This document shows, piece by piece, positions 8,712-56,388 of a DNA stretch of 64,000 nt. Position numbers and translations under genes: made by a program. The DNA comes from Phallusia mammillata (taxonomy: Eukaryota): contig OZ281494.1 of the NCBI GenBank assembly GCA_965637545.1, positions 18,848,001-18,912,000 on the forward strand, in the 5' to 3' direction. The notes under the pieces were generated by a model that saw only the letters and a list, made by a program, of their open reading frames with translations, did not search any database and was not told the DNA's origin. The stretch's first letter is position 1; each line of letters begins with the position of its first letter.

Positions 8712-11700
8712 ATGTTGAATATAAACTTAGTGACATGTTTGCTAGTACTTGAGGTGCTCACCTTTTCAGCGGGTTTTCCAACCAAGTTGGACGTTCAAAA
8801 TTTGAAGGTAAAATGTGTTTGTTTGTTGTGCTGTGTTGATATTAAACCAAAATAGCGATTCAGGAAACTTATTTAAGAACTATCGTTATTTGCACAGTTT
8901 TACGAGTAAATGCTCTTGCAGGTGGGAGATGGAATCGTTGATTTCAGCCTACCAGCATTGGACAAAAATATACAGTACGATGTTTCCATAACATCTACGG
9001 AGGTAAAAAATACATGAAAAGTTGTGCTTGAGTAACAGTTATGTGCGTCTTATAACGACAATTTGATAAACCCATTGTGACAAATGACGAAAAAAAAGAA
9101 TGAGTTAAGTTATTAAAACCAATGTAAACACTTGTGCACACAAAAAATTAACTTATGTGAACGTTTGTTTGAAAATGCAATTGCAGTTTATTTTAACGAT
9201 GCTATATTTTGGTAGCTTACTTAGTAGTTTGCTGTAATGCTTTTACACTTTGTGTTGAAATATCAGAACGGTCCATCAACAAATGCTACTTACAGCGGAG
9301 ATGTTTCAGTGGTGCAGATGCGGTTTCTTATGATTCCTTACTCTTCGTATGTGTTAAATGTCAAAATCAACATCGGTGGACAAGAAATTATGGGCAACGC
9401 GAGTTTTCAAACAGGCTGTAAATATTTAAACTTTATAACGACCAATTTATTTGGTACGAAACCCCATTTGGTTATCTCGTGGCAAATTTAACAGTGTTTC
9501 CAACCAAAATATTTGCAGGCAGACTCTATAAGCTGTTTAATTTGACATATCAGAGCAAAATGTCAGTATGCTTTGAGCACGATATTTAGTTTTTTTTTTG
9601 TATATCAGTATAGTTAAAAATGAGATTATTTGGGAATATAGTCTTGAATGCTTGATTTAATTTTGTCTACAAACTACAAGTTTTATTATGTTTTAGCATG
9701 TGAGATATTTTCATGCCAACCACGAAATTACAAATACAATGGATTTGTTTGCATCTCACCTCTGGATATATGCGATGGGGAATTACAATGCTTATTCGGA
9801 GAAGACGAAAATTCTTGCAAGTAAGAAAAAAATCACAACCTGTGTACAATATAACATCAGATTCCGGAGGGTATAATAAATTGCGTTAAACGCTTGTTAC
9901 TTTTTCCCATTTAGCATCTATACCAAACCAAATTTCGTCTTTTTTTAACTAAAGTCATTCTTTGCAGCTCCGCAATATATCGAGAAGATTTTTGTGATAA
10001 ACAATTGCCTTCGTACCTCTGTAAGTATTTACTTGTTAATGTGTATAGTTTTATTTTTTGATATGTTTGGTATACTTTGTGTTTTTTAGTTAACGCCACA
10101 AAAGTTGATCTTCATGTCCAGGAGGTAAGTCGAATGACTAATAAACTTGGAAGTTTGCCACCCATTTCACCCATATTGCCGTTTTAAAGCTATTTTCTTG
10201 TATTAAGTTCAATGGCCGAATAATCAACAGTTTAAAAAATGTTTAAGTACACGATCTTATATTATAGGTTGGGGAAAGACATGTAAAATTCAATATGAGT
10301 AGAATCGAAGGTGTTGCGTCCTACAAACTGACCATACTTCCGTGCTACGAGGTATGCGTTTTCCTATTCATTACGTTTGCCATTCGACCTATGACATGAC
10401 ATCATGTATTAGACCGAAAACACAGCAACTGAGGCTATATTTTCCGCCACATCAGAATCTTTGCAAGTCATGATAATGAAAACAAACCTTGTACCACATG
10501 CTGTGCACAAAGCTGTTGTCGAAGCTAAAGGTTTGGACGGGACAACTTTTGGTGGCTCTACAAAGTTTTTTACACCAGGTCAGCTCACATAATTTACGTT
10601 TTTATACTGTAAGTTCTATAAAACGCAGGTGAAAATGCGCAATAGTTTTTCATGTTGTTAATGTGGAATTGTGCATAAAAATGACTAAAACATGTAATTG
10701 TAAGTTCGTTTATGGTACGCTACTATTTTTTTTTTGAAATGAAACACCTACTTCAAAATACTATACTCTTGAAGAATGTATCATTCCTCTATATTGCCTA
10801 TCACCTGGAAAAACTCTATCAACTTGCCTGACAGAGGAGATAATGTGCGATGGAGTAGAAGATTGCTGGGATGGAACGGACGAGCAACATTGCGAACTGT
10901 TTCAAAGGCACGTATTCTTCTGCTTGCGTCACACTGTTGTATTAAAAATAAAACCCACGAAATTTTGCTGCTACGCAATCAAATTGTGCATATATTTTTC
11001 GTAAATTTGCCTTAAATGTTGGTAACTTATGAACTAATTTGCTGCTCGCCACCTTTCACAGAGTCAACGAAACATCGAAAAACTTGACAACTCAAGGTAA
11101 TAAAATGTTTGGTATTTTGCATGAGTATTTTGGTAATTACCAGCTATATTTCATTAAACTCTACAAATACCCTTTTCCAAAATCTGTTTTGCATTTTTGC
11201 GCCCAAATCGGCAAAACATAGGAAAAGTAAACCTACTTAAAAGTATGTTTAAAAAAAATAATATTTTTTCGAAGTAATGATTTTTACTGATACTTTTCTT
11301 CAGAACCGGATGCACCGGCGTATCAGAATATTTATAACAGGTGCAGTGGCTCTGTTTTTATTTGTTCGGTTTCCACTCAAGCTTCAGTAAAAATGTATTT
11401 TTTCGTATTTAAAAAATTTGCAGTAAGCCTGTATGCAAAACTAGCTATTACCTTTATTGACGTTTTTACTTTATAGCTCAATCGAACTACCAACAAACCT
11501 AACAGTCAAAGTCATTTCGGTAAGATTTTAGATACGAATACATTGCAGGGTTATGCTTTTACGTAATGCATGATCAACGTATTTGCAAAGATAAATGTTT
11601 AAACGACTTAAATGTATTTCATCTTACGAGCTTCATCTTAAAACTGTTTTACAGGTTGGCGATGGTTTTGTGGAAATAAGTGTTAGCCCAATTTCATTGC

Positions 11701-13262
11701 AAGCTTTTTACGACATCATCGTCGTAAATACTTTCACGGATGAGGTACAAATATTTTTTTGGTGTTTTAGGTCCTAACCGAATTAAATTTTCGAAAGGTG
11801 TTACTAATTACTATGTAATACTACGTTTCTATTACTAAATAAGTAACTTACGTTTTATCAAATTACAGTTTGGCCGCTGGCTTCAAGGACCACCGGTAAC
11901 ATCAACAACACTTAGTGGTGATGAACTTGTGTCATCCGTCAAGATAATGTTTCCAATGATGGAAGTAAATAAATACATAGTGACGCTTAAAACTATTGTT
12001 GGAAGCCAAGAATTAGTCGGCCAAGCTGGTTTTATGACAAAATGTAAGAAAGTATCAAGTTTGTTGGATTTCTATTTTATTTCTAGTTTAGTTTTTAAAA
12101 TCCTCAAAATCAATTTGACACCGATTTCGGCCAAAAAAATATGCCAAGTTTTAGGAAACGAATTGGATAAAAATGCAACAGTACGTTTTGGCCTCACGAG
12201 TTCGGGCTATTGTTACATCACAAACATATGACTTAAATTAGACTGGTTATCGCTTATTTAAGTTTGATTCCAAAATTAAACGTTAATAAATCATATATTG
12301 GAGACTAAATGTTTGTAAATTTGAATGGAAGACTTTTTTTGAACTAAAACACCCGACCATGTAGAAAAATGAAGAAAATGTCATTTACAAGTATGTTCTG
12401 TAATTTAACGACGTCCACTTTTTATTTAGGTTGCACTTTAAACTGGTTCTTTGAAACGAAATGTTCGGTCTCGGACTCTCTCCTCTGTATATCTCCACAG
12501 TTCATATGTGACAACAAAACTTTGTGTTCAGAAGGACAAGATGAAGCCTTCTGCGAATACTTCCACTATCAGTACGTTTATACATATTTTGCTCAACCTT
12601 TTGTATGGTAAAATACGTGTTGTTTTGTTTGTTTCAAAAGAAAGAAACCTCTCGATCCAGAACACTGCTACTGGAATCATAACCTTGGTAAGACTTTATG
12701 TTTCTTTATCCTGTGTTTCAACTTACTCATGATACTGTGTTTTTAGATCTGGCCTACGGCATTATTGACAAGGTAATGATTTGTAGTTTTGTGAATCAAA
12801 TTTGTTGCTAAAAATCTATTTTGTTTATAGTTTGACAATGGAACTTATTACGTAAGGATGCAGAAAGTGGAACGTGCAACATCATACGTTGTTTATGTCG
12901 GATATTACGCTGTAAGATTTGTAGTAAAAACATGCTCATGCCTCCTGCTTATGCGCAAGGTTTAATTAGACTTCGTGGGAAGAAGTTTATAGTCATTTTT
13001 ATTTGTCATTTCGTGAGAAGGTTTAATCCTGAATCCTCACCTAATCCTTTTTAGATGTAACGTGCAAAAAAGCAAGAAAAGTTATGAAAAAGTTACAATT
13101 TTTTTTATTGTACAGTGGGACGATTTCCACTGGCTACAGCTAAGTCAATCTTTTCCTGCAACTAATGATGATGTGCAAGTGATGGTCTTGACCGATCTCG
13201 ACTTCGCTGCCTTTGGCATCAAAATTTCTGTTGAAGCTTACATCGGGGACCGTTACTTATAG
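8712..13262 (+). CDS. Secreted mosaic protein: signal peptide, FN3-like x2, LDLa, linker, FN3-like, LDLa, FN3-like (~17 exons, ~500 aa)
   Basis: ATG 8712 gives signal peptide MLNINLVTCLLVLEVLTFSAG. Exons splice in phase throughout (e.g. 8712-8807, 8922-9002, ~9268-9418, ~10775-10905, 11062-11096, 11304-11340, 12430 onward, 12641 onward, last exon ending TAG 13262). LDLa 1: CIIPLYCLSPGKTLSTCLTEEIMCDGVEDCWDGTDEQHC. LDLa 2: CTLNWFFETKCSVSDSLLCISPQFICDNKTLCSEGQDEAFC. Three homologous VG(D/E) exons mark repeated beta-sandwich modules; the FN3 call is inference. Confidence 0.75.
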
Positions 13263-13978: not shown

Positions 13979-14547
13979 CTATAAGCTGCCTACATTTATG
14001 CCACGACTCGAAATATAATTGTCAATATACACACGAAAAGGCGCATATTTTACTTATTTTGTTTCCTCTTTACCTTCTTCTTCTGAAAGATTTGCAAGAT
14101 CACTGATAACTAAGTTTTCCAAATCTTTGTCTTCTTCATGCATTGTGTTTGCCGTGTCTTCCTGTTTTTCTAGAAAACATAATATTTAAAAATTTTACTG
14201 GTTGTACATTTCTCGAGGAATAAAATGAGTAAATTACCAGCAATGTCATTGTCTCCACGTGCGAATTTTCTTAAACGTCTGCAAAAAATGTCTTACGTTT
14301 TTCTCCAATGTGGGCAACAACAATGGCAATTATGTTGACACATTCGGCATTTAGTGACTAAAAGCATACACATTCTAATTTTGTTTGTTTATTAAATATA
14401 CTACCTTATGCGAAGGCAGGAAAATCGTCTTCGGAATGAGCGAACCAAGCGCCGCGCCAAACGCCGTGGGTAGACCCGCTTGGCGTCGCCAAAGTCAACG
14501 AACAACAAGAAGAGAACGACCAAAACTAGACAAGTCTTCAGTTTCAT
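13979..14547 (-). CDS. Cationic peptide precursor 1 (AMP-like): signal peptide + KRVYPRRLARRLVRSFRRRFSCLRIRRLRKFARG + acidic tail
   Basis: Exons 14405-14547, 14238-14278, 14074-14169, 13979-13989 join in phase (2,1,1). ATG directly follows an acceptor (cag|ATG). Signal MKLKTCLVLVVLFLLFVDFGDA is paralogous to copies 2-4. Tail DNDIAEKQEDTANTMHEEDKDLENLVISDLANLSEEEGSL. The last mini-exon is least certain. Not in the ORF track. Confidence 0.75.
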
Positions 14548-17380: not shown

Positions 17381-17890
17381 TTAGTTTTCTTCCTCCATTT
17401 TTTCCAAAAAGTCCATTGGATCATCGGCAAAATCTGGATCTTCCTCAAAATTTATCTCTTCAACATCTTCTCCTTGCTCTAAGATATATTTTAATTGTTT
17501 TACTGTTGTTCACGTTACAAGCAAAACCCGTAAAATACCTGGCATTTTGTCCTGTTCATCTTTCCCGAAAAGCCTGGAAAAAAATTATTAATTATTATAC
17601 GTTTTGCTAAAATGCTTACAACCACAAGAGATAGAATACTGCAGAATTAGGATAAAAGTCGCAACTGGATTGTTTTTTAGTTCGATAAATCTATGCTACC
17701 TTCTGCGGCGGAAAAACAATCGTCGGCGCCGGTGAATCCAACCAATCGATCGACGCCGAAAACGCCAAATCGAGCGACGCCGATGACGCCAAATTCGGCG
17801 ACGCCAAAAACGCCTTCGAATTAGCGAGTTCCCGAAATCAATCACCAACAAGAAGAGTAGTAGCAAGCATAGACATGTCTTCACCTTCAT
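17381..17890 (-). CDS. Cationic peptide precursor 2 (AMP-like, Arg/Trp-rich)
   Basis: Exons 17700-17890, 17539-17573, 17381-17478 in phase (2,1). MKVKTCLCLLLLFLLVIDFGNS | LIRRRFWRRRIWRHRRRSIWRFRRRSIGWIHRRRRLFFRRRRLFG | KDEQDKMPEQGEDVEEINFEEDPDFADDPMDFLEKMEEEN*. Probable non-coding first exon near 17955-17990, with a TATA-like TATATAAA (minus strand) near 18011-18018. Confidence 0.85.
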
Positions 17891-20146: not shown

Positions 20147-21860
20147 CAAGACACTGTATTATATACCAAGAAGGGAAAATCTACTACAACAACATACCTC
20201 ACGGCAGCCCCACATTCCGCTAAATTGTGATATGTGGCGCTAAAGCGACAGTAACCTATATAAAACAGTGTATCTCTAAAAATACTTGGTTGTATCATTA
20301 AAAGTTCAATAAAAACAACTTTAAGACTTAGTTCTTCATGGAAAATTTTCAAATACTTACTTCCCAGCCCTATTTTTTCTAGCAGCTAAATCAGTAATTC
20401 CGCTCTTGGCGTTTTAACTAACTTTCGAGTAGTAGCGGAAAGAGCTGAATTGTTTATTTCGCAGCCAAGGTAGGTTAGAAAGTATTTTTTGTTAAAATTT
20501 TGTGCATAGAAACTTAGTGTTAAAGTTAGTTTTATTGTATTTTAAATAATAATAATACCTGACCCCACTCCAAAAAGCATAGCTATAGTCAGCATGTTTA
20601 GAGATATGTCGTTTTAAATGCGTCTTAGTGCTCTTTGCTCCATCGGAATTTAGCGTAATGTGGGACTGTCGAGGTTTGGTGCTAGTAGATTTTTCGATAA
20701 GTTACCACTTATTTCTAAATTAGAATCCAACGGAAACGAAGCTTATTGGAAACATGTCTGTGTTTTGCCCAAACAAATATTTTGCAACAGTAGGATATGT
20801 TGCTTTATCCTTTTCTTAGATTTTAAAACTTATTTTGTTTTTTGCTAATGTTTATATGACGTGACTTATAAGATTACGCCGCTACAATTTTGTTTTTTTT
20901 GTTCACTTTACAAATTTCCATCAAGGTATTTACTTTTCCTTCTCTGTAGTAACTAGACAACACCAGATTCTAGTATTACATTTTGGAGAGATTGAATTAT
21001 TTGGGGTTTTTGTTTGGGTTTGGGGCATCAGGTACACCAAGTGCACTTAAAGACGTTTTTCTGCATGTTTGGGTAGTTTTGATAATTCCTGGCAATTGTT
21101 TGTCTTTTTGCGCATGGGTTTATGCGTTTATTCGTTTCCCCAATGGACACCCAACACTGAAAACGAAGATAATGTAAAAAAATCCTTTATGTAACGCACA
21201 AGCCCAACAACTCATTTTGTTTTGAAATAGTTACAACTGTAAATATATTTGTACTTTACATAATTACGAGCGGGTATTTTTTGTTCAGTTATCGGGTTTG
21301 CGCGGTATATGGGGAGTAGGTTTGTTTTTCCAGGTTAAAAAAATATTTGTGCGTAAGGTGTAGGTTGCTATTTTAACACTCTGTTATTTTGGTAGGGATA
21401 CAGGTTTGTTCTGACGTTGTTATTTTGCGAGACGGTTTATTTTGATTCGGTACAGATTTATTACGCCACGCTTGTTTGTATTTGAAATTGACTGCAATGT
21501 GTTCTAACGGTTTAGCCACTTGAAATTCGTTTGAGAAATGTCATATAGCTGCCTTTAACCTGTGTTCAACAATAAAAAGAAGTTGCTGCCCCATCGTGTA
21601 TTTATTTTGATCATAATTTTATCACAATATTTTGGAGATCGTCTTCCCTGTCAGAAGTCATTTTCTGTAAAAACATAAACAATTAATCAACAGCTAAATA
21701 AGCATATTATAGCACGCTCAATCACCAACAACAGGAAGCCAACATTTTAACACGTTTGCTTCTAACACAAGTAGAATTAGATTTTATACGTCTTTACTGA
21801 GCTACGGTTTTTATTAAGCTATCGTACAGCTAAACGTACCTTTAAATTTTTCTCTTAAAT

Positions 21861-22425
21861 TTATTCGGTAAGTTTATTCTCTTCTACTTCAAGCAGATCA
21901 TTAATATCATCTGAATCATCAGGAAGACTCTCGAACTCTTTGTCTTCTTCAAGTTTTACGTCTTCGTTGTCATCTTCGTTTTCTATTTGTTACATTAAAA
22001 AGAACAGACCCGCTACGCTTAAAAGTGGCCTAATACGCAAAAATGGAAATACTAAATGAGCTTGGCACACATTTTACGAGAGAGTGATCAATAACTTAAA
22101 TTGATCACTTTGTAGCAAGATTACCTAAATATTGACGGGTGTAGACCATATCAGATTTACCTGAGATAAAGTTGTCTTTTCCAGTCCTGTGTAAGCAAAA
22201 CATAATTTGTAGCAATGGTATTAGTAGCACATAGTTTCAGATAAAAACTTTAAAGACTTGCCTGCTGCGGCGGCGGTAGTAACAGCGTCGACGGTAGTAC
22301 GGTGTTCGACGTCTGTAGATTACAATACGTCTTCGACTTCTTCGTCGCCAAAAAAGCAATGAGTCACTCAGATCAACTACCAAAAGAAAAAGCACAAGGA
22401 GGGAGACGCACGTCTTGATTTTCAT
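21861..22425 (-). CDS. Cationic peptide precursor 3 (AMP-like, Arg/Tyr-rich)
   Basis: Exons 22262-22425 (GC donor AG|GCAAGT), 22161-22186, 21861-21982. MKIKTCVSLLVLFLLVVDLSDS | LLFWRRRSRRRIVIYRRRTPYYRRRCYYRRRSRTG | KDNFISENEDDNEDVKLEEDKEFESLPDDSDDINDLLEVEENKLTE*. Confidence 0.85.
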
Positions 22426-22574
22426 CTGTAAACGCAAACAAATAGTATATTACACTTTAACGTTTATAAACTACAAGCAAATTTCACTTAAAAATACATG
22501 TTTTGTTATTAAACCTACCTTGTTTGATCAACCTTCGCTGTACCAAACTGTGCAAAGTTTACATTGACAGCTAC

Positions 22575-22585
22575 TTATATAGCAT
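22575..22585 (-). promoter_or_regulatory. TATA-like box of precursor 3 (equivalent site ~27177-27185 for precursor 4)
   Basis: GCTATATAAG on the minus strand, ~25-60 nt upstream of a probable non-coding exon ending in CAAG|gtaggt near 22519. Confidence 0.45.
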
Positions 22586-23440
22586 TCAAATCAAACCGAA
22601 ATATCCAATCAGCCGTTGAGAAGTAAAATCCAAACGTGTTGGCGTTTCCCTCTCTTCCGTGCCCAAATAGGCAGCCTGCCTTAAAATCGCAAACAAATCC
22701 GGTTTTGGGTGTTTATCCGCACAACCCACTGCAATTTTTAGCGTGAAGATAGTTTTACCGGATAAGCGATGTATTTATATTCCGTAGGCAAGAACAGTGG
22801 GTGCGTCCTTTGTGAACCCGCACCATCCTTAGTTGATTTCAAATCATCCACCTACTGTAGAAATCCTTCTTGTGACAGCTGTTGTTGTAACAAGCTTTTG
22901 CGAGTGAGCAATATCGAGATAAAATATTGCAATCAAGTATTTTGATTAATTAAACCTTTAAGTCTTCTTGGGGGTTATTGCGGGCTGCAGCGGGCCGATT
23001 GACATTAAAAATACACGCGAGGGCCACATAGCATGCAAGCCCGAACGCAGCGCTGTTCCAAAGCTGTGCTTCGCGTAGATCTTTTGTGGAATCTAAAGAA
23101 GCTCAATGGCTTACTACAATCTTATTTAGAGTCATATAGTGCTACTGTCAAAACGTAAAATTCTGTGCCATATTCAAGAGTCTCCTCTATTGGCAATATT
23201 TATTTATTTTCATCGCAATTAACCAAACAAAACATTGGTTCGTACAATAGCGAAGGCATTAATATATTTAGTCCTGCTGTGATGTAACAAACTGTCTTTC
23301 GAACGTTTTTCTTCGTTCTGTAAAACAAGGGGAAATTAATCCTATAGGTATACATATTGTTGCGGGAACACTTACATTAGAAATAGTTAACGCAAGATTA
23401 TTTTTTTTGAGATTTATGGCAAGATAAAAGGCCTTCGCGG

Positions 23441-24029
23441 CAGAGTTGCAAGTCGGGCCGGGCTTTTCGGGCCGGGTTCGGGCCGGGTTCAGGCCGGGTT
23501 CGGGCCGGGTTCGGGCCGGGTTCGGGCCGGGTTCGGGCCGGGTTCGGGCCGGGTTCGGGCCGGGTTCGGGTTCGGGCCGGGTTCGGGCCGGGTTCGGGCC
23601 GGGTTCGGGTTCGGGCCGGGTTCGGGCCGGGTTCGGGCCGGGTTCGGGCCGGGTTCGGGCCGGGTTCGGGCTTAGGTATTTGTGAGAAAACGGGCTTAAA
23701 ACGGGCCTGACTTTAGGTTCCGTGCCCGCCATTGTTTTTTAAATAAAATCATTCAACTAAGTAACGATTCTCTGGCTTTGACCTAATGCCCACCCTCCTC
23801 TAAAACGTATTGTTTACCCCATTGTCTACTATTGTTCATTGTGTTTGTTGCCTTTCTCTTTTTTTTTCTCATCCTTTGTTGCAAGGCTTTCTTGGATAGG
23901 CCCGTCAATCAAAATTTCGGGCCTAAACGGGCTTTGCAAAAACGTTTCGGGTTCGGGTCGGGCTTCGGGCTTATACTTTCGGGTTCGGGCCGGGTTCGGG
24001 CTCAGATTTCGGGCCCGCTTGCAACTCTG
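23441..24029. mobile_element. hAT MITE containing a GGGCCGGGTTC tandem array
   Basis: TIR CAGAGTTGCAAG / CTTGCAACTCTG; TSD CTTCGCGG. Absent from duplicate unit B, which has a single CTTCGCGG at ~28033-28040. Confidence 0.9.
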
Positions 24030-26466
24030 CTTCGCGGGCCGGATAAGATGACGTCGCGTGCTGGATCTGGCCCACGCGCCGCGGGTCGTAGTTTGGGGCA
24101 CCTGGCTACAGAGTGTATAGGAAAAACCGAAATGTTACTTCCAGAAAAATTGAAGTGCAAATGAGGCGGCTTAAAACAACTTGCTGGGGAACAAAATTGT
24201 CATTGACTTGATGACAATAGTTTTGTCAAATCGTTTAAACTTTACAGTTGAATACTATTTTTGCGACATCCAAAGACGATTCTGTTCGTGGTTAAGAATG
24301 TTTTAGGTTTCTGAAAGTACTACAAGTCCCCTAAATATAATGCAAAACATGCAGAAACATCAAAACATCTGGATACTTTTGCTGCAAATATTGTGCGATT
24401 GCACCCACCAAAGGCTTGTAGATTACATATAATGGGCAAAAAATATGTCAAGACATGGATATACGAAAGCTGTGTTGGAAACAGCATAGGCCCAGCCCAT
24501 TTCAATTGAGAGAAGGGACACAAAACTTGATAAATATTTAACATGGCATTAATTTAAGTCCACGACTTTTCTTACGATCTTATGAACCAAGCCTGCTTAC
24601 TTAATTTGCAACCGGTCCAGAATCCTGCAATCACGGCTCACCACTAAAGCCAATTATACTCCCTCACACTGGTTTAGCCTATGGGCGCGACTTATATTTA
24701 AAACAATGTAAAAGCAAAGTTACACCGAGCACGTGGCAACCCACCACCAATACCAACAACAACACCACTACGTTTCACGGCGCCCAGAGAAAAGCCCTAT
24801 CAACGACTAGCGACGCGCTATTTTAGGCATGTGGAACAAGAAGGCACATTCCGGCGCAATCAACGCCTTGCAAACCAATCACCCCTAAGGGGAAGCAGCG
24901 AGGGTGCCACAACACAAAAACGTAATTAAGGTGCCACAACGAAAAAGAACGAAAACAAAAAGTGACGGTGACAAAAAATCAACAAGCAAATAAAATTTCG
25001 CTACAGTAGCCCAAAGAGCTGAATTGTTTATTTCGCAGCCGAGGTAGGTTAGAGTTAGAAAGTAATTTTTTAAAAAAATTGTGTATAGAAACTTAGTGTT
25101 AAAGTCAGTTTTATTGTATTTTAAATAATAATAATACCTGACCCCATTCCAAAAAGCATAGCTATATAGTCAGCATGTTTAGAGATATGTCGTTTTAAAT
25201 GCGTCTTAGTGCTCTTTGCTCTACCTATCGGAATTTAGCATAATGTGGGACTGTCGAGGTTTGGTGCTAGTAGCTTTTTCGATAAGTTACCACTTATTTC
25301 TAAATTAGAATCCAGCGGAAACGAAGCATATTGGAAACATGTCTGTGTTTAGCCCAAACAAATATTTTGCAACAGTAGGATATGTTGCTTTATCCTTTTT
25401 GTGCTAAACACCTTACTTAGATTTTAAACTTATTTTGCGTTTGTTTTTTGCTGATGTTTATATGACGTGACTTATAACATTACGCCGTTACATTTTTGTT
25501 TTTTTGTTCACTTTACAAACTTCCGTCAAGGTATTTATTTTTCTTTCTCTGTAGTAACTAGACAACACCAGATTCTAGTATTACATTTTGGAGAGATTGA
25601 ATTATTTGGGGTTTTGTTTGGGTTTGGGGCATCAGGTACACCAAGTGCACGTAAAGACGTTTTTCTGCATGTTTGGGGCAGTTTTGATAATTCCTGGCAA
25701 TTGCTTGTCTTGTTGCGCATGGGTTTATGCGTTTATTTGTCGCCGCGATGGACATCCAAAACTGAAAACGAAGATAACGAAAAATTCCTTTATGTAAAGC
25801 ACAAGTCCAACAAATCATTTTGTTTTGAAATAGTTACAACTGTAAATATATTTGTACTTTACATAATTACGAGCGGGTATTTTTTGTTCAGTTATCGGGT
25901 TTGCGGGGTATATGGGAAATAGGTTTGTTTTTCCAGGTTAAAAAAAATATTTGTGCGTAAGGTGTATGTTGCTAAACTTTATCACTCTGTTATTTTGGTA
26001 GGGATACAGGTTTGTTCTGACGTTGTTATTTTGCAAGACGGTTTATTTTGATTCGGTACAGATTTATTACGCCACGCTTGTTTGTATTGGAAATTGACTG
26101 CAATGTGTTCTAAAGGTTTAGCCACTTGAAATTCGTTTGAGAAATGTCATATAGCTGCCTTTAACCCGTGTTCAACAATAAAAAGAAGCTGCTGCCCCGT
26201 CATGTATTTATTTTGATCATAATTTTATCACAATATTTAGGAGATCGTCTTCCCTGTCAGAAGTCCTTTTCTGTAAAAACATAAACAATTAATCAACAGC
26301 TAAATAAGCATATTATAGCACGCTCAATCATCAGCAACAGGAAATCAACATTTTAACACGTTTGCTTCTAACACAAGTAAAATTAGATTTTATACGTCTT
26401 TACTGAGCTACGGTTTTAATTAAGCTATCGTACAGCTAAACGTACCTTTAAATTTTTCTCCTAAAT

Positions 26467-29417: not shown

Positions 29418-29639
29418 NNNNNNNNNNNNNNNNNNNNNNNNNNNNNNNNNNNNNNNNNNNNNNNNNNNNNNNNNNNNNNNNNNNNNNNNNNNNNNNNNNN
29501 NNNNNNNNNNNNNNNNNNNNNNNNNNNNNNNNNNNNNNNNNNNNNNNNNNNNNNNNNNNNNNNNNNNNNNNNNNNNNNNNNNNNNNNNNNNNNNNNNNNN
29601 NNNNNNNNNNNNNNNNNNNNNNNNNNNNNNNNNNNNNNN
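29418..29639. other. Assembly gap (222 N)
   Basis: Run of N. Confidence 1.
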
Positions 29640-30092: not shown

Positions 30093-30117
30093 CGCCAATC
30101 TGGCGATCCCCTACTAC

Positions 30118-33580: not shown

Positions 33581-33640
33581 AAAACCTAAATAAGAGTATT
33601 ATTTCATTTATGCACTTGTATTCCTATATTAATGTCCCAT

Positions 33641-37215: not shown

Positions 37216-37409
37216 TGTATTTATTGCTAAAAGCTATTCCACTACATTTACAGGCGCAGCAAAATTTTTGTCCCAAAAAGAAATAAAAATCCGGTCAACA
37301 TTTAGATCTTTACTTATAAGGTACTTAAGGCAGTAAAGCCAATAAGGTTCTGACATATATGTCAACTGTAGTTGAAAAAACTTGTCATCTATTGTTGCGT
37401 TTTGGACAG

Positions 37410-40400
37410 GCAGCCCCAGCAACCGTAACGACACGGCCAATTAACCTTGAAGTGTTACAATGACCAACACTTTACTGTCGTAACAATCTAGTCACTTGAA
37501 AAAACTGACCCGAGATAGGTTTCATGTCTGCCACAAGTTAACTTGTTCAGTACATTGCAACCTAGACATCTTATGACGTAACAATGCATCTGATAGGTTC
37601 TATCATCACGCCATGTCACGCCTTGTGTTTGAACTAGAGTAACCTGTGTTTTGGGGGCTGTGGTGCGTTTTTAATAACGAGTGCATTCTATTGTGGAGAG
37701 AATACAGTAAACATCTCGAAAGTTCTCGGTGTGCCAAAGACAGCGTCAACACAAATAGCAACAGTAGGGATATCTGACCCGATTAGTTTGCGACAATGTC
37801 ATGTCCGAGCACATAAATGTTGAAATTAAAAAAAATATATTTTGGCCTCTAAGCAAATCTTTTTGCCGATTTTAGACTTTGATATGTCGCAAATCTTGCT
37901 TTACAGTACACGAATGTGCGCATAACATTCATGCACGCCAGTAAATCACACAACTTTGCATCCAATAGTTTTTTATCTCATTGTTCAGTGATTGTTTTTT
38001 CACAGAAAACCTTGAGCCACATGATTGACGTGATTAACGCATTTGTCGTGGTTAAAACGTAAATATTACGTACGTTCAAATAAACTTCACGTGTTTCCAT
38101 AAATTGGACTTCTAGTGTGATGTCATATGTTAAAACAGTCGCGCGAATTTCTGACTGTACATCAGTTGTGAGTCGTAACAATTAGTTCGTGTCATTTTAC
38201 TAGTTCACTCTGGCAAGATTTGGAAAACACATTATAACACCGCCAAGTCTAGAACGACATTACCATGAGTTTTAAAGAACAAGCAAGTGGAAAACATGAT
38301 TGGTTATGAAAAAATCTACACAAACAGTATACCACACGTCATAGGTGCAGAATTGATTATGTGTAAAAGTGTGTTAAAACAAGCCATGCAATTTGACACA
38401 TTTCAGTCCCAGCATAATGATCGGCACATTTCGCAGCTAATTTTTAATTTTCGGATCAATTTCTTTTTTCCGTTGCGATTTCATCTTCTACTTCGTCGTC
38501 TTGCTATTCTTCGTTTCCTCGTTTTAATTCTTTAACGTGACTTCTTTGTATTCTCTACAAGATAATATAAGACGTCCTTTTTTAAAACCTTTGTATTGCT
38601 AAGATGGCAGAATATCAGGAAACCAGTCTGATTTTAAAGGGGTGATGGCCACTGGCGTCGCCGTGAAGGGGATAAGCGCAATGACTTCAATCCTGAAGGC
38701 TTGAAAATGCAGATTTTGTCCCCATAACTTGAATTTTTGCTGATGTCGCTACTGATTGTTTTAACAATTACGATTCTGCATTTGGATTTTTTAATTTGCA
38801 AACCAAGAAACTAGAGCCGACACTTTCAGTAATAAGTTACTAAATAATTGTGCTTAAATATGCCACGTGGCTGTGAAATACATGTGCTTGCGTTGCGAAC
38901 TCATAGTACGAAAAAACACTTGTTAATTCCACTTACCTTGGTCATCGAAACTGGGTTTGGATCGCAAGCTTGTGTGACACCTGTCCACCATTAACTGACA
39001 TTTAACTTTCAGCACAATGCCACATCTCTCCTTAAAAGTCTTTGCCAGTTGCTTGCTGGAATGGCAATAAATAGAAGTTTGCAATACAAAATCACACGGC
39101 TATGGACCTACAAGTTCCTACAAATGGACGCTTTATCACAAATTCTACGTTTTTTGACAAAGACATCTTCTTTTTAATACGAGTTATTTCGTAATAGTTA
39201 TTTCTTGAGTTCCTGCCCACTGATGTCGCTTGGATTTGATTTCCACACAGTGCTGTCTTTTATAGGACCACATGTTTGCTTACTGAGTGGTTATGACCTT
39301 GTAGCTCCTTAAACATTTTTTATCAAGCACTAATTGATCGGTCTAGCAGAGTAGCAGTGATGTCATTGAAAAATATATTTTGTCGAAAGCGTCAAATAAT
39401 TCAGGCAACCATTGCAGTTATTGACAGGAAAGTGAAAATAGGGAAAAAGTCGTAGGCATAGTTTGCCAAATTAATTGATATTTAAAGAAAAGTCTGACTA
39501 CCAAATTTCGTGTGGACGGCAACTTGAAAACAATAATTGCCTGACTTCAAAATAGAAATTTTTTGAATGATGATAACACAGGGCAACAAAAAAATATTTT
39601 TTTACTGGTGTCAGTAATGTTTTAATTGATTTTGACTAATTTGAGTGCCCTGATTTCAAAAATGCAATCGGTTTATCTGTATCACGTCTAGTTTAAATGT
39701 TATGGTACATCCACGTTTGAAAAACAATCTATATGTATACACTATAGTGAAACTGGTTTTGAGTATTTTAAGTGGAATTACCGTTATTGCAAGAACAAAG
39801 TTTCGATTTAATTTTAAATGTAACAGGTAGACACTCCTAACAAACAAAATTCCACACAAAAAACAAAAAAAAAGGTTTCAAATTTGTAAGTTGTCAGGTA
39901 TATCGGATATAGGCCTACCCTACACATGTACTTCTGTAACTTTTGGAAATGACTGGCAGCAATATCGTCCCGTTTAATTTACCAACAGTAATTAGCCAGG
40001 ACCACATTATTCCCTCTTCCCTGGCACGTTTCGTTTTACTGATATCCTGTTGGAACCTTTCAGCTTAATTCTCATCATTTATATCCCCTACGTTTTAAGG
40101 GAAGTGTAGCTTTATACTCATTTTCGTTCCGAATTTATCAGACCGCTTAATAACTTAGTTTTGTACTATGTCTAGTAATGTTAGTATATTTCTACTGTTT
40201 TTGTCCATTACTGTAATATTCCAATCAACATTAGGTAAGTGGAGCCCATTGCTTGTCCTAAACCCCCAAAGTCACATCTAAGTGTGCAAGATATGCACAT
40301 TTGATACAGATCTTTTTTTTCTTTTTAGTTGTGTTCAATGGGTATTCACCAGTAATCTAGAATAAAACATCTTGGTAATTCATGCAACACCTTATAGATG

Positions 40401-48023: not shown

Positions 48024-49024
48024 TCAGTCCCAGCATAATGATCGGCACATTTCGCAGCTAATTTTTAATTTTCGGATCAGTTTCTTTCTTCCGTTGCGAT
48101 TTCGTCTTCTACTTCGTCGTCTTGCTATTCTTTGTTTTCTCGTTTTAAATCTTCTACGTGACTTCTTTGTATTCTCTACAAGATAATTTTGAGCGTCAAT
48201 ACATAAAACTTTGTGTTGTAAAGAGGGCAGAATATCAGGAAACCGATCTGATTTTGAAGGGGTGATGGCCACTGGCGTCCTAATGTTTTGAAAATGCATA
48301 ACTTATAATTATTTGCTGGTTACGCTACTGATTGTGTTAACAATAACAATCTTCCATCTGCATGGCGTTTGTAATTTGCGGAGCAGTTAGGTGAGTAGAG
48401 CCGATACATAATTTAGGAAAACTGTATGTTTGTCGTATCATAGATCTCTAAACTTATGCATCTCACTTATACAATAATTGTACTTTTAAGTACATGTAAT
48501 TGTGTTAAAAACTCATAGTACAATAAAATAATCCACTTACCTTGGTCATCGATACTGCGTTTGGATAGCAAGCTTGTGTGACACCTGTCCACGATTAATT
48601 GACATTTAACTTTCAGCACTATGCCACAACCCTCCTTAAAAGTCTTTGCAAGTTGCTTGCTAAAATGCCAAAAAATAGGAGTTTACAACATACCAAATTA
48701 TACGGCTATCGACCTACAGGTTAAATGTGTGCACTTTATCACAAATTATACTGCATTAGGGACAGAATGATTATATTTTTATACAGCCTAAAAATTTACT
48801 ATTATATAAAGCAAGGATTACACCTTTTGCACTTGGCGTTTACTATGTAGAAACACATTTCCATTTTCCTCTTACCGTGTAAAAACCATTTTGTCAAGTT
48901 GATCGCTGTTTCTTTTCAGCTGCTTTGCCAGTTTGTTACCACGACGACGTCCTGCTACGCCTGACGCCACGCAAACCACAAGCATTATCACAAAAGTTAA
49001 CATTGCGTTTTTTGACAAAGACAT
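48024..49024 (-). CDS. Secreted, highly cationic 6-Cys protein (~140 aa), unknown family
   Basis: Exons 48876-49024, 48541-48659, 48024-48175 in phase (2,1). MSLSKNAMLTFVIMLVVCVASGVAG | RRRGNKLAKQLKRNSDQLDKMVFTRKQLAKTFKEGCGIVLKVKCQLIVDRCHTSLLSKRSIDDQENTKKSRRRFKTRKQRIARRRSRRRNRNGRKKLIRKLKISCEMCRSLCWD*. Synonymous changes against the pseudogene copy (CTT/CTG, ATA/ATT, CAA/CAG) support the frame. Confidence 0.8.
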
Positions 49025-50441
49025 CTTCTTTATATAATACGAGTTATTTCGTAATAGTTATTTCTTAAGTTCCTGCCCACTGATTTGATTTCCACACAGT
49101 GGTGCCTTTTATAGGACCACATGTTGGCTTACTGAGTGGTTATGACCTCGAAGCTCCTTAAACATGTTTATCAAGCACTAATTAATCAGTTTATCAGTGA
49201 TGTCACTGTGAAAACATATTTTGTTGAAAGCGTGAAGTAATTCAGGCAACCATTGCAGTTATTGCCAGGAAAGTGAAAACAGAAAAAGTCCGAAAATAGG
49301 CTATCCATAATTTGCTAAATTATTTTTGAAACAACCTGGCTACTAAAATTCGATCGGCAACTGGAAAACAACATTGCCTGCGAAAATCACTTCAAAATAG
49401 AGATTTTTTTAATGAAAAGTAGAAAAGTAGAAGTTGGTAAACTTTTCAAAACGACAAAATTTCATTGGCACTGCGGTTGCCCTCGGCAATAGATTTGACA
49501 ACTAAATTATTGATATTCCACAGGTAAGATAATACAAAAATTCAGTAGGCCTACATGATGAAAAAAAGTTTCGGGTTGGATAAAATGCTTGGATATTATG
49601 CGATGTTTTGTTTTCAACGTTATAATATAAGCAATATTTACTGCGGCAACGGTTTTACCGATAAAACCAGGGCTTATCTTAAAAGGTCTTAAATTTTACT
49701 TCACCCCGAAGTTGTTTGTTTTGATCTTAAAGGCGGTCGCACCGATCTTAAAAAACATTGGAATTTGCTATTACAGTTCTACACAGTTCCCTCATCAGAA
49801 ACCTAAACAAACATTTACTTTCGCTGTGAAATTAGACGTGTAACCCCACCAATGAACACAGGTTATTTACGCTATTGACCTGGTTTTGTTTGATAAGGTT
49901 GCGTTGGCAGATGTGATCCGCTTTCTATTTGTATCAGTGGTTCTCAACCTTTTTTAGTGTCGGGGCCAACAGTAATTGTGTAAAGTGTATAAGGAGATGA
50001 CAGTTTTTTTTAGAATCAGTGGCAAATGGGTATTTCCTTGCTACTCGTACTTGCTAAATTTAAAACTTTAATTTCTTGGAAACAATCATAAGCTAAAATT
50101 CAAAGCATTTTGTAGTGCCTCAAAACTTAACTTTTTGAGCGCGCAAATAAATTTTATTTCATCATGTTTAGAAGACAAATACCACATGTTTTAATGTGAC
50201 TACTAGGAATACACGCAGCTAGCCGAAAAATTCCAAGCAGATGCTTCTATCATCAAAGTAAAAAACTCCATAAAAATCCAATGGCCTCAAACAGCGGAAT
50301 ACTGAAAGGAAAGAAGCAAGGACAATCATTATTCCTTGCAGTTTTATTTTCGACTTCTAACTTTCAGACATGTACTGCTCTGTGTTAGGGTATTTAGTTG
50401 CGAAACATAAAAAGCAAACATTTTACGAAAGCGGCAAGATT

Positions 50442-52284
50442 TTAGCATCGGGATCTTACAAACCAACCGGTCCTCCAGAAACTCCACTGATTTTTTACTT
50501 TGCTAACACATGAAGCGAAAGTTCGGTCACACCGGCAAGTTTTCAAACCGATTGGTGTCGTTGAAACTGAAAAAATGACATTTTGTAAACATTCATCGCA
50601 AGACAGTAAAATCAGACAACCATGTTTCAAAAAAGCATGCAATTCCTCCCAGCAAAGTTAAACAACTGCTAACACCACCACACCTTACGTCAGCGGAAAA
50701 TCTACCAACACCATAACTCACGTCAGCCGCACATTTAGTTAATTTTCGATAGGTGGTGCAAAGAGGACAAATCCATAACATGGTTTATCTCATGTATGCT
50801 GACGGTTAAATCTATTAGGGTTGGGGTTAGGTATTAAGATTAAAAACTCAATGAAACTAACTCTAAAATTCAGTTCCTAACTTAATGTAAAATTTTCAAA
50901 AACTTACTTCCCAATCCAGAGTGGATTCTTTAGACGCTAAATAAGCTTATATAATTCAGCTCCTGCGCCACCTGTCAAAAATTAGCTAAGTGTGCGGCTG
51001 ACGCGAGTTATGGTGTTAGTAGCCAGACACACGTCGGTCGCACATTTGACTAATATTCGATAGATGGAGCAAAGAGCACAAACACCTATTTAAAACGGTA
51101 TATCTCCAAAAATGCTTTAAATTTGGGCTATTTGGTTTGAGGTATGGCATTTTCATAAAAGTTCCTAATGTAATATTTTAAATAAAAACTTACTTCCCAA
51201 CCCTACCCTTCTTTAGTTGCTAAATTAATAATTTAGTTTATTGCACCACTTACCGATATTTGGGTAAATGTTGGGCCGGCGTGAGTTATGGTGTTAGTAG
51301 CTCTATAGAATTTACCAGAGGGTTATAAATGATATATTGTTATCAAAAATGGTCCTGGCGAAATCTTCACTAAACCAGATAAACATGCAGTAAAAACAAA
51401 TGTGATAACAGAAAGTTACTTACAACATGAGATCTTGTGATTAACACATGTTGCGGTGTACGTAGCAGTAAAGGTAAGAAATTTGACAAAACTTTTGTAG
51501 CCTTGAGAAATCGCGGCAGCATGCAAACATGTATCATGAGTTTTGCAGCACCTGAAAATATTATCTAAGAGGATATTGTCCTGAAATACTTATGTCAACA
51601 AATTGTTCTTACTATGTTACTAAATTTTTGATATTTTAGGTGCAAAACTTGTAGTACATATGTTTTTACATTAAGACGAGCCACATAAAGATCGATCTTG
51701 TAGTTTCATTATATTTTACCATGCACTTACCTATCAATTGCATCAACGGGTTCTCCTGACCCGCCGAAACCACACCAGCAACCGTAATTGACGTATTTCC
51801 CAAACAGTCGAAACATGGATTTCCAATCAAGGTTCTGCTGCTGGTAACAGGCCAGAGTAAATGGCATATTGTAAAGTACAACATTTCTTGACGATTTTAC
51901 AAGGGTTTCGGCCTCAGTGGTCTGATTTGTAGGAGATTGGGGATTGTGTTCTTTGACGATCTGTGCCTAATACATAGATCAACATATCTTGCTACACTGT
52001 TCTTGATTTTATTACAAACATGCTTATATTTAATTTTTATCTTTCGACTCGAGATGGTAACAATTTTTTCATGAAAATGTGGAAATATAAAAATGCAACA
52101 AGCGGTTCGCTTTTATCAGCGAGCGACAAACTATATATCTGTTATGCGTTTTACACATCTTGTGTTCATTTTATGCTACAAACGTTTCTACGAATACCTG
52201 AACAGGAATGTAGGTCCGATCGTCGCTTGCCAACACATTAATCGCGTATCCTGTCATCAGCATACAAATTAACTGAGCAAGCAT
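50442..52284 (-). CDS. Secreted phospholipase A2 B (group I/II/V/X fold), 4 coding exons
   Basis: Signal exon 52198-52284 ([19 protein letters not shown]); Ca-loop exon ~51731-51924 ([18 protein letters not shown]); active-site exon ~51425-51551 ([10 protein letters not shown]); last exon 50442-~50565 (CRCDR...[14 protein letters not shown]). Phases 0,2,1. Confidence 0.88.
50600..51310. repeat. Degenerate ~300-bp tandem repeat family in a PLA2 intron; related sequence at ~20230-20720 and ~25010-25300
   Basis: Recurring TCGATAG(G/A)TGG(T/A)GCAAAGAG(G/C)ACAAA, ACTTACTTCCCA and GAGTTATGGTGTT(A/G)GTAG motifs; reverse-complement matches at 20630-20640 and 25208-25235. Confidence 0.6.
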
Positions 52285-52974
52285 TTTTTATCGTGCCCTT
52301 TGTTCGATAAATATCCGATCGAAGATTTCTACTTAAATGTGAGTTATATTCTTTCGTTTAATCGCTTGATACTGGACTTTCTAAAATACTCGACTTATGA
52401 ATCATTTACCACCCGAAATCCTGATCTTCTTAATCGTAGTGGTAGAACATTACTTTCGACCTTTACTTTATGTACGAGTTTGAAAGAAGCATTAGCGAAA
52501 ATTGCATTTGTGAAACTCCCTTTTGACACACTTGCTTACGTCACTGTGCGATTAAGTTTCACTTAACATCCTGTCGGCTGTCAATCATTTGTACTTTATC
52601 GTGGTCAGATTACCTTGTACTTGTTCAAAGTTTCCTGTGACATGCAATCCAGTCGAACCTTGCGAAGGGATTTGAGTCAAAAACGTTTTTGCTTTTACCA
52701 ATAAAAAAAATTGCGCCAGCAGTGTCAAGAAAAATGCTTTATATTAACCGCAATAGTTTCATCGTTACTATTAAAATAAAAATGTAAGGCGTAATAATTA
52801 GGCTTGGAATAAACGAAAAATTTGCATGACTACCCCTTCTAGAGTGTAACAACAAAAGACGCATCACAAATTGCGTTAACTTTATATACACACACCATTT
52901 CCTTTCTGTTATTTTAAATTTGTATGGAAACACAGCCTCCAAATGAAGGTAAATAAGCGAAGCAAGTGCTACGG

Positions 52975-53996
52975 TTAACATGACCCTCGAAAGAAGGGCC
53001 AAGTATTCCAGAACGTCCAATCATCGTCGTATTTCACAACACAGGCCGATAATTTTTGATCACACTCACAATATTCTCGATTTCCTCCATGATCATCTGG
53101 TAAATAAGCATCAAGTATATACCTTAAAATCGTGTGTATATTTGCTTTTAATATCGATATACTCACATTACATAACGGGCGTATAACTGGTATCGTGATC
53201 AGCGCCTTTTGTTATGTCTTTGTTTGAGTATTAGTATTATTGTTAAAGTATTATTATGATCGAATCCAGCTATTTCCGTCATTAAAACTTTGTTCCACTC
53301 AGTAAAAAATGACGTAAAAATGTATGCTTAGTAGTCACAGTATTTATTTTAAGGCAATTACAAAGAAATCACTTACAGCATGTTGTTCTCATATTTTTAC
53401 AGCTCGTCTTGTATTTGGTGAACAGTCCGAGCGGGTCTAACCATCTAGGTTTGCCTGACTTCTTAAGTGCAAGTTGATAACACAGATCGTGTTGTTTGCA
53501 GCAACTACAGCAAAGACTCAAGAAATAAATTGGAACAATAATTATAACTTTTACTTGCTTGAATGCCCTATCTCTTTAGCATGTTTGTGTCTAAAAGCAA
53601 TAAGATTACTTACGCATCAATTGAATCCACAGGTGTTCCATGGCCTCCGATACCACACCAACAACCGTAGTTCCCATACCACAAAGCAATTTTTGACTTT
53701 GTTAACGAGTTATAACTTAATCCATGGTAGCAGGCGATTTGAAAACGCATGTTGTGATGGATAGAGGCATAAGAGCCAGTAAATGACCGAACGCTTGGCA
53801 AAGAATTCTAATGAAAACATGCAACCGGTTTTTTGTCAATCAAGTTTGATACAACGTAACTCATTATTCATACTTTTGGTGGATTTTGTTTGTTACCCGA
53901 ATCTTTGCTTTTCTTCACTACCATATTGAAGTCAACATCACCAACCACGCATACCACTACAGAGCAACAGGTCAACAACTGAAGTAGAAGCATCAT
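52975..53996 (-). CDS. Secreted phospholipase A2 A (group I/II/V/X fold), 4 coding exons
   Basis: Signal/pro exon ~53874-53996 (MMLLLQLLTCCSVVVCVVG); YGNYGCWCGIGGHGTPVDSIDA; CCKQHDLCY; CECDQKLSAC...WTFWNTWPFFRGSC*. His48, Asp49, Tyr52 and Asp99 equivalents intact. Same intron phases as PLA2 B. Confidence 0.92.
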
Positions 53997-55303: not shown

Positions 55304-55884
55304 TTTTAAACAACAATGCTTGCGTAATAAACGGGGCTCGGTTGAGTATTTATTATTTTTCTCTTGAGTGAAATTCATCTGTCTGCGGTCAGCTAATTTG
55401 GTGTCTACATTAATGAATGAATTCATAAATTCATATGAATTCATACAATATTACAATTTACTAGGGTGTGCCAAAAAGTTTGACAAAAAAACCTAAAAAA
55501 ATGAGTTTTGTGATTCGGTTTTGCACATATCTATTACCAATGAAAGGATAGTAAGTTATAATATATTTTTGGACACTTCGACGCGCATAGTGATGACCAA
55601 ATATGTACAAAGCACCTTTGTATGCATATTTCAACACTATAAACTGCAGCTGCCTCCTACACCTCAAAACATCCGATGGGACCTTGCCTATATTGGGACA
55701 TACATATCCGTTAAGTGATCAACAACAGTATGTAACAAATTGCCTGTAAAGATCATCGTCAAGACAGGACTTCGCACTGCAACACTATAAACGTAAGTTC
55801 ATTAAAATAATATTTAAATAAAATAGATAAATTCGGTGTTACTTTATACTGTGATCTGCAACTTTTGTAAACAATACCTTCCAG

Positions 55885-56388
55885 ATGAAAGCAGCCATAC
55901 TTCTTGCCATTTTGTGCACAGCCCTTCTGCTTTTGGAACAGAGCGTAGCCTGGAAGATACGAAGAATTCGTACATGGAGAAAACATAGAAAGTATGAGTG
56001 CTATCATCCCACAATTATTTTTTTTCTTTAACAATACACCCGTGTGGTGGCAAGTACCACGTTTTAAAACCTCTTTTGTATATTATAGATATATTTTTTG
56101 AACTATCAATATGGTTTATAGCTGGTTTCATCGTCGTCGCCGCCGCCGCCGTTGTTTCTTCGGCAAAGATGGAGCTTCACCACAAGAGACTAAATGGGGT
56201 AAGAAAAAGTTAAATGATATTCAGGTCGATTTTGGTTTGCATAGTGTATGCCATTTTGCTTAAAGCAACAGTAAAATACTGCTTTCTGTAACCTTCAATG
56301 TATTTTAGACATACATGTTGAAAACGAGTTTCCCGATCTGGGTGGGTTGTCAAAAGACATCACTGATGACAACAAAAACAGTTCCTAA
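55885..56388 (+). CDS. Cationic peptide precursor 5 (AMP-like, Arg/Trp-rich)
   Basis: Exons 55885-55991, 56122-56198, 56309-56388 in phase (2,1), with cag|ATG start. MKAAILLAILCTALLLLEQSVA | WKIRRIRTWRKHRNWFHRRRRRRRCFFG | KDGASPQETKWDIHVENEFPDLGGLSKDITDDNKNSS*. Not in the ORF track. Confidence 0.82.

What the first reader, a model, noticed from the sequence alone, without database searches (positions are those of the whole stretch)
8712..56388. Secreted host-defence island: cationic peptides, 6-Cys cationic protein, sPLA2 pair, FN3/LDLa protein and a methyltransferase
Seen: of the 10 intact host genes I could model in 8.7-56.4 kb, 9 have signal peptides. Two segmental duplications, one pseudogene and dense MITE insertion are present. 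Established: cationic group IIA sPLA2 is bactericidal and works better with membrane-permeabilising peptides. Inference: this is a co-regulated antimicrobial or tunic-secretion cluster of unrelated families evolving by birth and death.
Basis: inference. Interest (0 to 1): 0.75.

Follow-up and report, generated by a model that had tools for sequence, protein, structure and literature searches.

The report
Sea-squirt cationic peptide gene neighbourhood
This stretch of a sea-squirt chromosome really does hold ten genes, nine of them for secreted proteins. It is best read as an array of arginine-rich peptide-precursor genes with a few unrelated neighbours, and nothing yet shows that they are switched on together as one defence unit.

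Summary
The gap (29418-29639) lies in repeat-rich intergenic DNA, and no gene model crosses it.

Main new result: the "cationic peptides" are one multi-exon family. Each gene encodes a signal peptide, a poly-Arg/aromatic core (net +14 to +22), a G(K)D junction and an acidic tail (net -5 to -16). Five copies lie in the window, one lies 10.6 kb beyond it, and four lie on another chromosome. The only relatives in 1.84 billion proteins are two uncharacterised Ciona savignyi proteins with the same layout. That layout matches published Ciona antimicrobial-peptide precursors. The scan had already noted a similar cluster 14 Mb away in this genome.

Corrections:
- The PLA2 pair is not group IIA; it is closest to group I.
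- FN3 is not confirmed.
- The methyltransferase is a cytosolic Tmt1-like enzyme.
- The 6-Cys protein belongs to a family whose main array is 10 Mb away.

Co-regulation is unsupported. In four RNA assemblies from two studies only PLA2-A appears as a spliced transcript, and its neighbours do not. The splice models of the peptide genes are predictions without RNA support.

The parts
8712..13262 (+). Secreted LDLa-repeat gene. The signal exon starts at 8712. The LDLa modules lie in the ORFs 9648-9821, 10738-11001 and 12348-12608.
   Evidence: Pfam PF00057 E 1.1e-4, 4e-5 and 3.5e-3. No Pfam hit for the 'FN3' exons. Splice chain is incomplete between 9820 and 10795.
14054..14547 (-). P14, an Arg-rich precursor of 99 aa in the predicted model. 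Exons 14547-14405, 14278-14238 and 14169-14054.
   Evidence: Paralog search; models with GT-AG introns, core +16, tail -12.
17381..17890 (-). P17, an Arg/Trp-rich precursor of 107 aa in the predicted model. Exons 17890-17700, 17573-17539 and 17478-17381. The core contains a 24-nt x3 internal repeat.
   Evidence: Core +22, tail -16. AATAAA lies 26 nt after the stop.
21861..22425 (-). P22, a precursor of 79 aa in the predicted model, with a GC-AG first coding intron. It lies inside segmental duplication copy 1.
26467..27028 (-). P26, the recent duplicate of P22 (78 aa in the predicted model). It lies inside segmental duplication copy 2.
20487..28577 (.). Segmental duplication 1: 20487-24571 and 25066-28577. 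An 11-nt microsatellite at 23466-23671 is present only in copy 1.
29418..29639 (.). Assembly gap in intergenic, repeat-rich DNA. A tRNA-Ser-like SINE lies at 29799-29874.
   Evidence: No model crosses the gap.
30053..34567 (-). Degenerate LINE with zinc-knuckle ORF1 and endonuclease, reverse transcriptase and zf-RVT in four broken ORFs.
   Evidence: Pfam hits.
36028..37215 (-). Class I SAM methyltransferase, Tmt1-like, with no signal peptide.
   Evidence: PF08241 E 5e-21. Yeast trans-aconitate methyltransferase 3g5t E 1.7e-18. N-terminal hydropathy 0.28.
38398..39320 (-). Pseudogene of the 6-Cys cationic gene.
   Evidence: Deleted signal exon and two in-frame stops.
48024..49024 (-). 6-Cys poly-Arg/Lys secreted protein, 139 aa in the predicted model. 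Exons 49024-48876, 48659-48541 and 48175-48024.
   Evidence: Model: mature net +31, pI 11.6, 6 Cys. Paralog array of about 9 copies at C1:29.20-29.23 Mb. Not seen in 4 RNA assemblies.
50341..52478 (-). PLA2-A, a basic secreted phospholipase A2 of 191 aa. RNA-supported exons are 52478-52197, 51965-51729, 51549-51424 and 50566-50341, with the ATG at 52284. A 42-residue stretch separates the signal peptide from the enzyme domain.
   Evidence: Spliced contigs in 4 runs from 2 studies. ORF. Pfam and PDB matches. Charge.
50702..51022 (.). MITE in PLA2-A intron 3.
   Evidence: 59-nt inverted ends. 730 first-look candidates in the genome, with the 40 scored copies spread over all eight large contigs.
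52975..53996 (-). PLA2-B, the paralog of PLA2-A, modelled by homology (about 189 aa). Its catalytic motifs are intact.
   Evidence: Domain net +4, pI 8.4. No RNA contig.
55885..56388 (+). G10, the fifth Arg-rich precursor, 87 aa in the predicted model. Exons 55885-55991, 56122-56198 and 56309-56388.
   Evidence: Core +14, tail -5, GT-AG introns, AATAAA after the stop.

Best explanation
The window holds part of a tandem, birth-and-death array of an ascidian-specific gene family. Each gene has a non-coding first exon, an intron that ends right at the ATG, a conserved signal peptide and a hypervariable poly-Arg/aromatic core. A short exon carries a G(K)D junction, and a last exon encodes an acidic tail.

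Inferred mechanism: the acidic tail neutralises the core during export or storage. Cleavage at the junction, with the Gly possibly serving for C-terminal amidation, then releases a strongly cationic peptide that attacks microbial membranes or other polyanions.

Several unrelated genes lie between members of this array:
- a tandem pair of group-I-like secreted PLA2 genes, one of them basic and transcribed;
- a copy and a dead copy of a second cationic Cys-containing family;
- an LDLa-repeat secreted protein;
- a cytosolic methyltransferase;
- transposons.

The co-location is real. It is most simply explained by local duplication in a gene-dense region, not by a jointly regulated unit.
For: - Four paralogs share the signal peptide and an open Arg-rich exon.
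- A TATA-like box, a GTAAGT-type donor and a CAG acceptor directly before the ATG are conserved.
- In every copy the apparent stop overlaps a donor site. Splicing there gives a G(K)D mini-exon and an acidic tail, with canonical sites in P14, P17 and G10, a GC donor in P22/P26, and 126-nt introns in both P14 and P17.
- More members lie at C1:18922772 and in a four-copy array on C6.
- A profile search of 1.84 billion proteins gave two family hits, both from Ciona savignyi, with the same layout. Their acidic tail was not part of the profile. hhalign probability is 97%.
- The published layout of Ciona AMP precursors is signal, cationic, anionic (PMC7387483).
- PLA2-A is spliced in RNA contigs.
Against: - There is no RNA, peptide or activity evidence for any Arg-rich gene.
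- Exact-product look-ups found nothing, and the joined models could not be searched.
- The cores are not obviously amphipathic helices like the validated Ciona peptides.
- A G(K)D junction is not a classical dibasic processing site.
- Absence of the neighbours from contig assemblies of unknown tissue or stage is weak evidence against co-expression.
Confidence: 0.6

Rival explanations
1. One reading: a co-regulated host-defence (or tunic-secretion) island. Cationic peptides, the cationic Cys protein and a bactericidal basic PLA2 are expressed together and act in synergy.
For: Three unrelated cationic secreted families sit within 45 kb. PLA2-A is basic. The genes from P14 to PLA2-B all lie on the minus strand.
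Against: PLA2-A RNA is present without PLA2-B, the 6-Cys gene or G10 in the same assemblies. A cytosolic methyltransferase and a LINE interrupt the block. Other arrays of each family are not linked to one another. The PLA2s are not group IIA.
Confidence: 0.15
2. The Arg-rich precursors are real but not antimicrobial. They could yield amidated signalling peptides ending in Arg-Phe-like residues. Alternatively they could act as polyanion binders, for sulfated tunic glycans, blood-cell vacuole contents or nucleic acids, or as cell-penetrating peptides.
For: Several cores end in F or FF directly before Gly, which looks like an amidation signal. The charge density is extreme and hydrophobic content is low.
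Against: Each precursor holds one long core rather than repeated short peptides flanked by dibasic sites. A hypervariable core under a conserved signal peptide is typical of defence peptides, not of hormones.
Confidence: 0.2
3. The small Arg-rich ORFs are chance ORFs in AT-rich DNA, not genes.
For: About 10% of random ATG-ORFs in this window start with a hydrophobic stretch. There is no RNA evidence and there are no annotated products.
Against: The same four-part architecture, with matching splice sites, occurs in at least ten loci and in two Ciona savignyi proteins.
Confidence: 0.03

Closest known systems
Ciona linear cationic antimicrobial-peptide precursors (Ci-MAM, Ci-PAP and related; PMC7387483)
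   Same: The order is signal peptide, cationic region, anionic C-terminal region. The signal peptide is conserved within a family. They are multigene, ascidian-specific families.
   Different: Here the core is poly-Arg with Trp/Tyr/Phe rather than an amphipathic helix. There is no detectable sequence similarity to those families. Activity and blood-cell expression are untested.
Ciona savignyi uncharacterised proteins H2ZHV0 and H2ZHU7
   Same: 82-residue proteins with a homologous signal peptide, an Arg-rich/aromatic core, a Gly-Asp junction and an acidic tail.
   Different: They are from a different genus and only profile-level similarity is detectable. A single-sequence search back into this genome found nothing. 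Their genomic neighbours could not be inspected.
Group I secreted phospholipase A2 (pancreatic and elapid enzymes)
   Same: The Ca-binding loop, the CCxxHD catalytic motif and a C-terminal Cys are shared. The best solved matches are krait, cobra and pancreatic enzymes. A pro-segment may be present.
   Different: These proteins have 12 rather than 14 Cys. The N-terminal-helix Cys is displaced from position 11. PLA2-A has a 42-residue stretch between the signal peptide and the domain.
Group IIA bactericidal sPLA2
   Same: PLA2-A has a basic enzyme domain and is secreted.
   Different: There is no Cys50, so the IIA-defining disulfide to the C-terminal Cys cannot form. Both an N-terminal Cys and a Cys near position 77 are present.
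The ~24-locus Arg-rich precursor cluster noted by this scan 14 Mb upstream on the same chromosome (s1-375376)
   Same: The described layout is the same: shared signal peptide, hypervariable cationic core, acidic tail.
   Different: My profile did not hit that region, so it is a different subfamily or signal peptide. I did not examine it.

Membership tests
Secreted phospholipase A2 (Pfam PF00068) | Ca-binding loop Y-G-C-x-C-G-x-G-G | tested here: met
   Present in both genes. Exon-level Pfam E 4.6e-7 and 1.3e-7. PDB alignment.
Secreted phospholipase A2 (Pfam PF00068) | Catalytic His48-Asp49 in a CCxxHD motif, and Asp99 after C-x-C | tested here: met
   Read directly in the RNA-supported ORF of PLA2-A and in the PLA2-B exons.
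Secreted phospholipase A2 (Pfam PF00068) | Whole-domain score above the curated cut-off (32.1 bits) | tested here: inconclusive
   Only single exons could be scanned: 32.6 bits (PLA2-B) and 30.8 bits (PLA2-A) for one exon each. The joined protein was not searched.
Group IIA sPLA2 | Cys50 disulfide-bonded to a C-terminal Cys; 14 Cys; no Cys11-Cys77 pair | tested here: not met
   Residue 50 is Thr (A) or Leu (B). Each domain has 12 Cys. An N-terminal-helix Cys and a Cys near position 77 are present.
Group I sPLA2 | Cys11-Cys77 disulfide | tested here: inconclusive
   A Cys near 77 exists. The N-terminal Cys aligns near position 2-4, not 11 (alignment offsets). Pairing cannot be shown from sequence.
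Ascidian AMP precursor layout (PMC7387483) | Signal peptide, then cationic region, then anionic C-terminal region | tested here: met
   Predicted models of P14, P17, P22, P26 and G10. The splice junctions lack RNA support.
Ascidian AMP precursor layout (PMC7387483) | Antimicrobial activity of the released peptide, and blood-cell or epithelial expression | not testable with these tools
   No assay was possible. The single read-laying run was used on 48-54 kb.
LDL-receptor class A module (PF00057) | About 40-residue six-Cys module with an acidic D-x-x-D-E cluster | tested here: met
   Three exons match: 24.2 bits (cut-off 24.1), 22.8 bits and 18 bits. Only the first clears the cut-off.
Fibronectin type III | Match to an FN3 profile | tested here: inconclusive
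   No Pfam family at E up to 0.1 for the exons 9228-9488 and 11839-12228. The domain would span two exons, which could not be joined for a search.
Class I SAM-dependent methyltransferase | Rossmann-type Methyltransf_11 domain with a G-x-G-x-G SAM loop | tested here: met
   PF08241 E 5.4e-21, 75.5 bits. Closest structure is 3g5t, E 1.7e-18.
Co-regulated gene cluster | Neighbouring genes transcribed in the same samples | tested here: inconclusive
   PLA2-A is present while PLA2-B and the 6-Cys gene are absent in 4 contig assemblies. Contigs show presence, not absence, and the tissues are unknown.

The most novel reading that the evidence does not exclude
Three unrelated cationic secreted families (poly-Arg precursors, the 6-Cys poly-Arg/Lys protein and a basic PLA2) are co-expressed from this neighbourhood in one blood-cell or tunic cell type and act together on microbes. 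That would make it a true innate-immune gene cluster in an invertebrate chordate.
Probability: 0.12. Interest if true: 0.75.

Novelty: new variant of a known kind. Interest (0 to 1): 0.45.

Why it matters
Ascidians are the closest invertebrate relatives of vertebrates and rely on innate defence. The Arg-rich precursor family described here is almost absent from protein databases: two uncharacterised Ciona savignyi entries among 1.84 billion representative proteins. If the peptides are made, they are among the most arginine-dense natural secreted peptides known. They would be candidates for new antimicrobial or cell-penetrating chemistry. The window also shows how such families grow, through tandem copies, a 4-kb duplication that is still 93-99% identical, and a dead copy. 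The broader claim of a jointly regulated defence island would be interesting, but it currently rests on proximity alone.

Tried and rejected
- Exact-product look-ups of the single-exon ORFs of P14, P17, P22, P26 and G10, and of the Ciona protein, found nothing on record. For the window's genes, the real products are probably the longer spliced forms.
- A word search with the P22 exon gave no hit. With the Ciona protein it found only the two Ciona entries.
- Pfam scans of all peptide and 6-Cys exons gave nothing meaningful.
- A single-sequence search of the Ciona protein against this genome found nothing.
- I first treated the peptides as single-exon genes. I dropped that once the donor overlapping the stop and the downstream G(K)D and acidic exons were seen in every copy.
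- I considered whether the gap hides a third duplication copy. Its left flank is unique in the window, so there is no sign of that.
- A full splice chain for the LDLa gene failed at one junction.
I redid it with coordinates only.
- Joined (spliced) protein models were built only inside scripts to read length, charge and Cys count. They were not sent to any search, fold or look-up tool, so every database result here is at exon level.
Full report
**Nature of the sequence.** The window is AT-rich eukaryotic DNA (GC 33-44%). It lies at C1:18,848,001-18,912,000 of a 240-Mb assembly. Earlier notes of this scan name the organism as the sea squirt Phallusia mammillata. I did not verify the name, but the only outside relatives I found are from Ciona.

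**The gap.** The run of N at 29418-29639 was checked first.
- The left flank is unique in the window.
- The right flank begins a 117-nt unit that recurs 355 nt further on, around a tRNA-Ser-like SINE and next to a LINE.
- No ORF other than runs of X spans it, and no gene model comes within 2 kb of it.
- Continuity across the gap therefore does not bear on any claim here. I made no attempt to fill it.

**Inventory.**
- Nine have a hydrophobic N-terminal region with small residues at -3/-1. The methyltransferase does not.
- This is only a heuristic. About one in ten random ATG-ORFs in this window also starts hydrophobic.
- Both segmental duplications, the pseudogene, a genome-wide MITE and a broken LINE are confirmed.

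**The peptide genes.** This is where the picture changes.
- The four minus-strand ORFs at 14.5, 17.9, 22.4 and 27.0 kb share a signal peptide and an open Arg-rich exon.
- DNA alignment shows a TATA-like box, a short upstream exon with a GTAAGT-type donor, and a CAG acceptor directly before the ATG in all copies. The same is seen at a paralog on contig C6 and at the plus-strand gene at 55885.
- In each copy the apparent stop overlaps a splice donor. Using that donor gives a mini-exon carrying G(K)D and then an exon encoding an acidic tail.
- The introns are canonical. They are 126 nt long in both P14 and P17, and P22/P26 use a GC donor.
- The resulting models are 78-107 residues long, with cores of net +14 to +22 and tails of net -5 to -16.
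- A sixth member lies 10.6 kb past the window, and four more form an array on C6.

**Relatives of the peptide family.**
- A profile of the signal-plus-core exon, searched against 1.84 billion representative proteins, gave three hits. Two are 82-residue uncharacterised Ciona savignyi proteins with the same four-part layout. Their acidic tail was not in the profile. hhalign probability is 97%.
- The third hit is a repetitive 186-residue protein with repeated hydrophobic segments. I take it to be spurious.
- The layout of signal, cationic region and anionic region is the one published for Ciona antimicrobial-peptide precursors (PMC7387483).
- No paper in the library mentions the two Ciona accessions.

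**The PLA2 pair.**
- Contigs from four RNA runs in two studies splice PLA2-A with GT-AG introns on the minus strand. They give a 191-residue precursor.
- Both genes keep the calcium loop and the His-Asp catalytic motif.
- Residue 50 is not Cys, each domain has 12 Cys, and the best solved relatives are krait, cobra and pancreatic enzymes. They are therefore group-I-like, not group IIA.
- The PLA2-A domain is basic (net +10, pI 9.2). PLA2-B is only mildly basic (net +4).
- The genome has at least eight PLA2 loci.

**Other genes.**
- The 6-Cys gene models cleanly as three exons: 139 residues, mature net +31. It is not an orphan, because about nine paralogs form an array at C1:29.2 Mb.
- The methyltransferase is closest to yeast trans-aconitate methyltransferase and has no export signal.
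- The LDLa gene has three LDLa modules. Its 'FN3' units get no Pfam support, and its ORF could not be closed across one junction.

**Is it an island?**
- After collapsing duplicates, four of five families are secreted. That is suggestive but weak, given how many windows this scan inspects.
- The RNA runs that hold PLA2-A show no contig for PLA2-B or the 6-Cys gene. Their 6-7% word share of 48-56.4 kb is accounted for by PLA2-A plus MITE pieces, so G10 is not there either. Seven other RNA-like runs hold none of these words. The tissues are unknown and contigs cannot prove absence, so this does not refute co-expression, but it gives no support.
- The other arrays of the three families are not linked to one another.
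- Synteny in other ascidians could not be tested.

**Limits.** All database searches were done exon by exon, by reference. Joined protein models were used only inside scripts to read length, charge and Cys count. The peptide splice models, the signal-peptide calls and every functional statement are inferences.

Noticed in passing
window 62200-62270 (-), possible next exon from 62069: An exon encodes a signal peptide much like that of the Arg-rich family. It ends in a canonical GTAAGT donor, but the likely next exon is His/Asp/Glu-rich rather than cationic. It may be a family member with a non-cationic core.
   Followed up: partly
C1:18922644-18922772 (-), 10.6 kb beyond the window end (locus L010): A further Arg-rich precursor, with the G-K-D junction inside the same exon and an acidic downstream ORF. 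The family array therefore extends past the finding on the right.
   Followed up: partly
G000 C6:9630382-9639063 (-), loci L005/L008: A tandem array of four related precursor exons on another chromosome. The one modelled is 63 residues long, with an Arg/Trp core, a Gly-Asp junction and an acidic tail.
   Followed up: partly
G000 C1:29199925-29228880 (-): About nine tandem paralogs of the Cys-containing exon of the 6-Cys cationic gene, at 64-76% identity. This is the main array of that family.
   Followed up: no
window 52197-51966 region; PLA2-A residues 20-61: PLA2-A carries a 42-residue, slightly acidic stretch between the signal peptide and the enzyme domain, and an Arg lies shortly before the domain. 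It may be an activation pro-segment, as in pancreatic PLA2, but much longer.
   Followed up: no
window 57495-58513 (-): A THAP zinc-finger ORF (Pfam E 1e-6), with a further ORF downstream. It looks like a domesticated or decaying transposase just outside the finding.
   Followed up: no
window 23466-23671: An 11-nt microsatellite of about 20 copies, present in duplication copy 1 only. It explains why copy spacing drops from 4.6 to 4.0 kb.
   Followed up: yes
window 44271-44473: Two inverted copies of a repeat of about 130 nt that occurs at dozens of places in the genome, forming a 203-nt foldback.
   Followed up: yes
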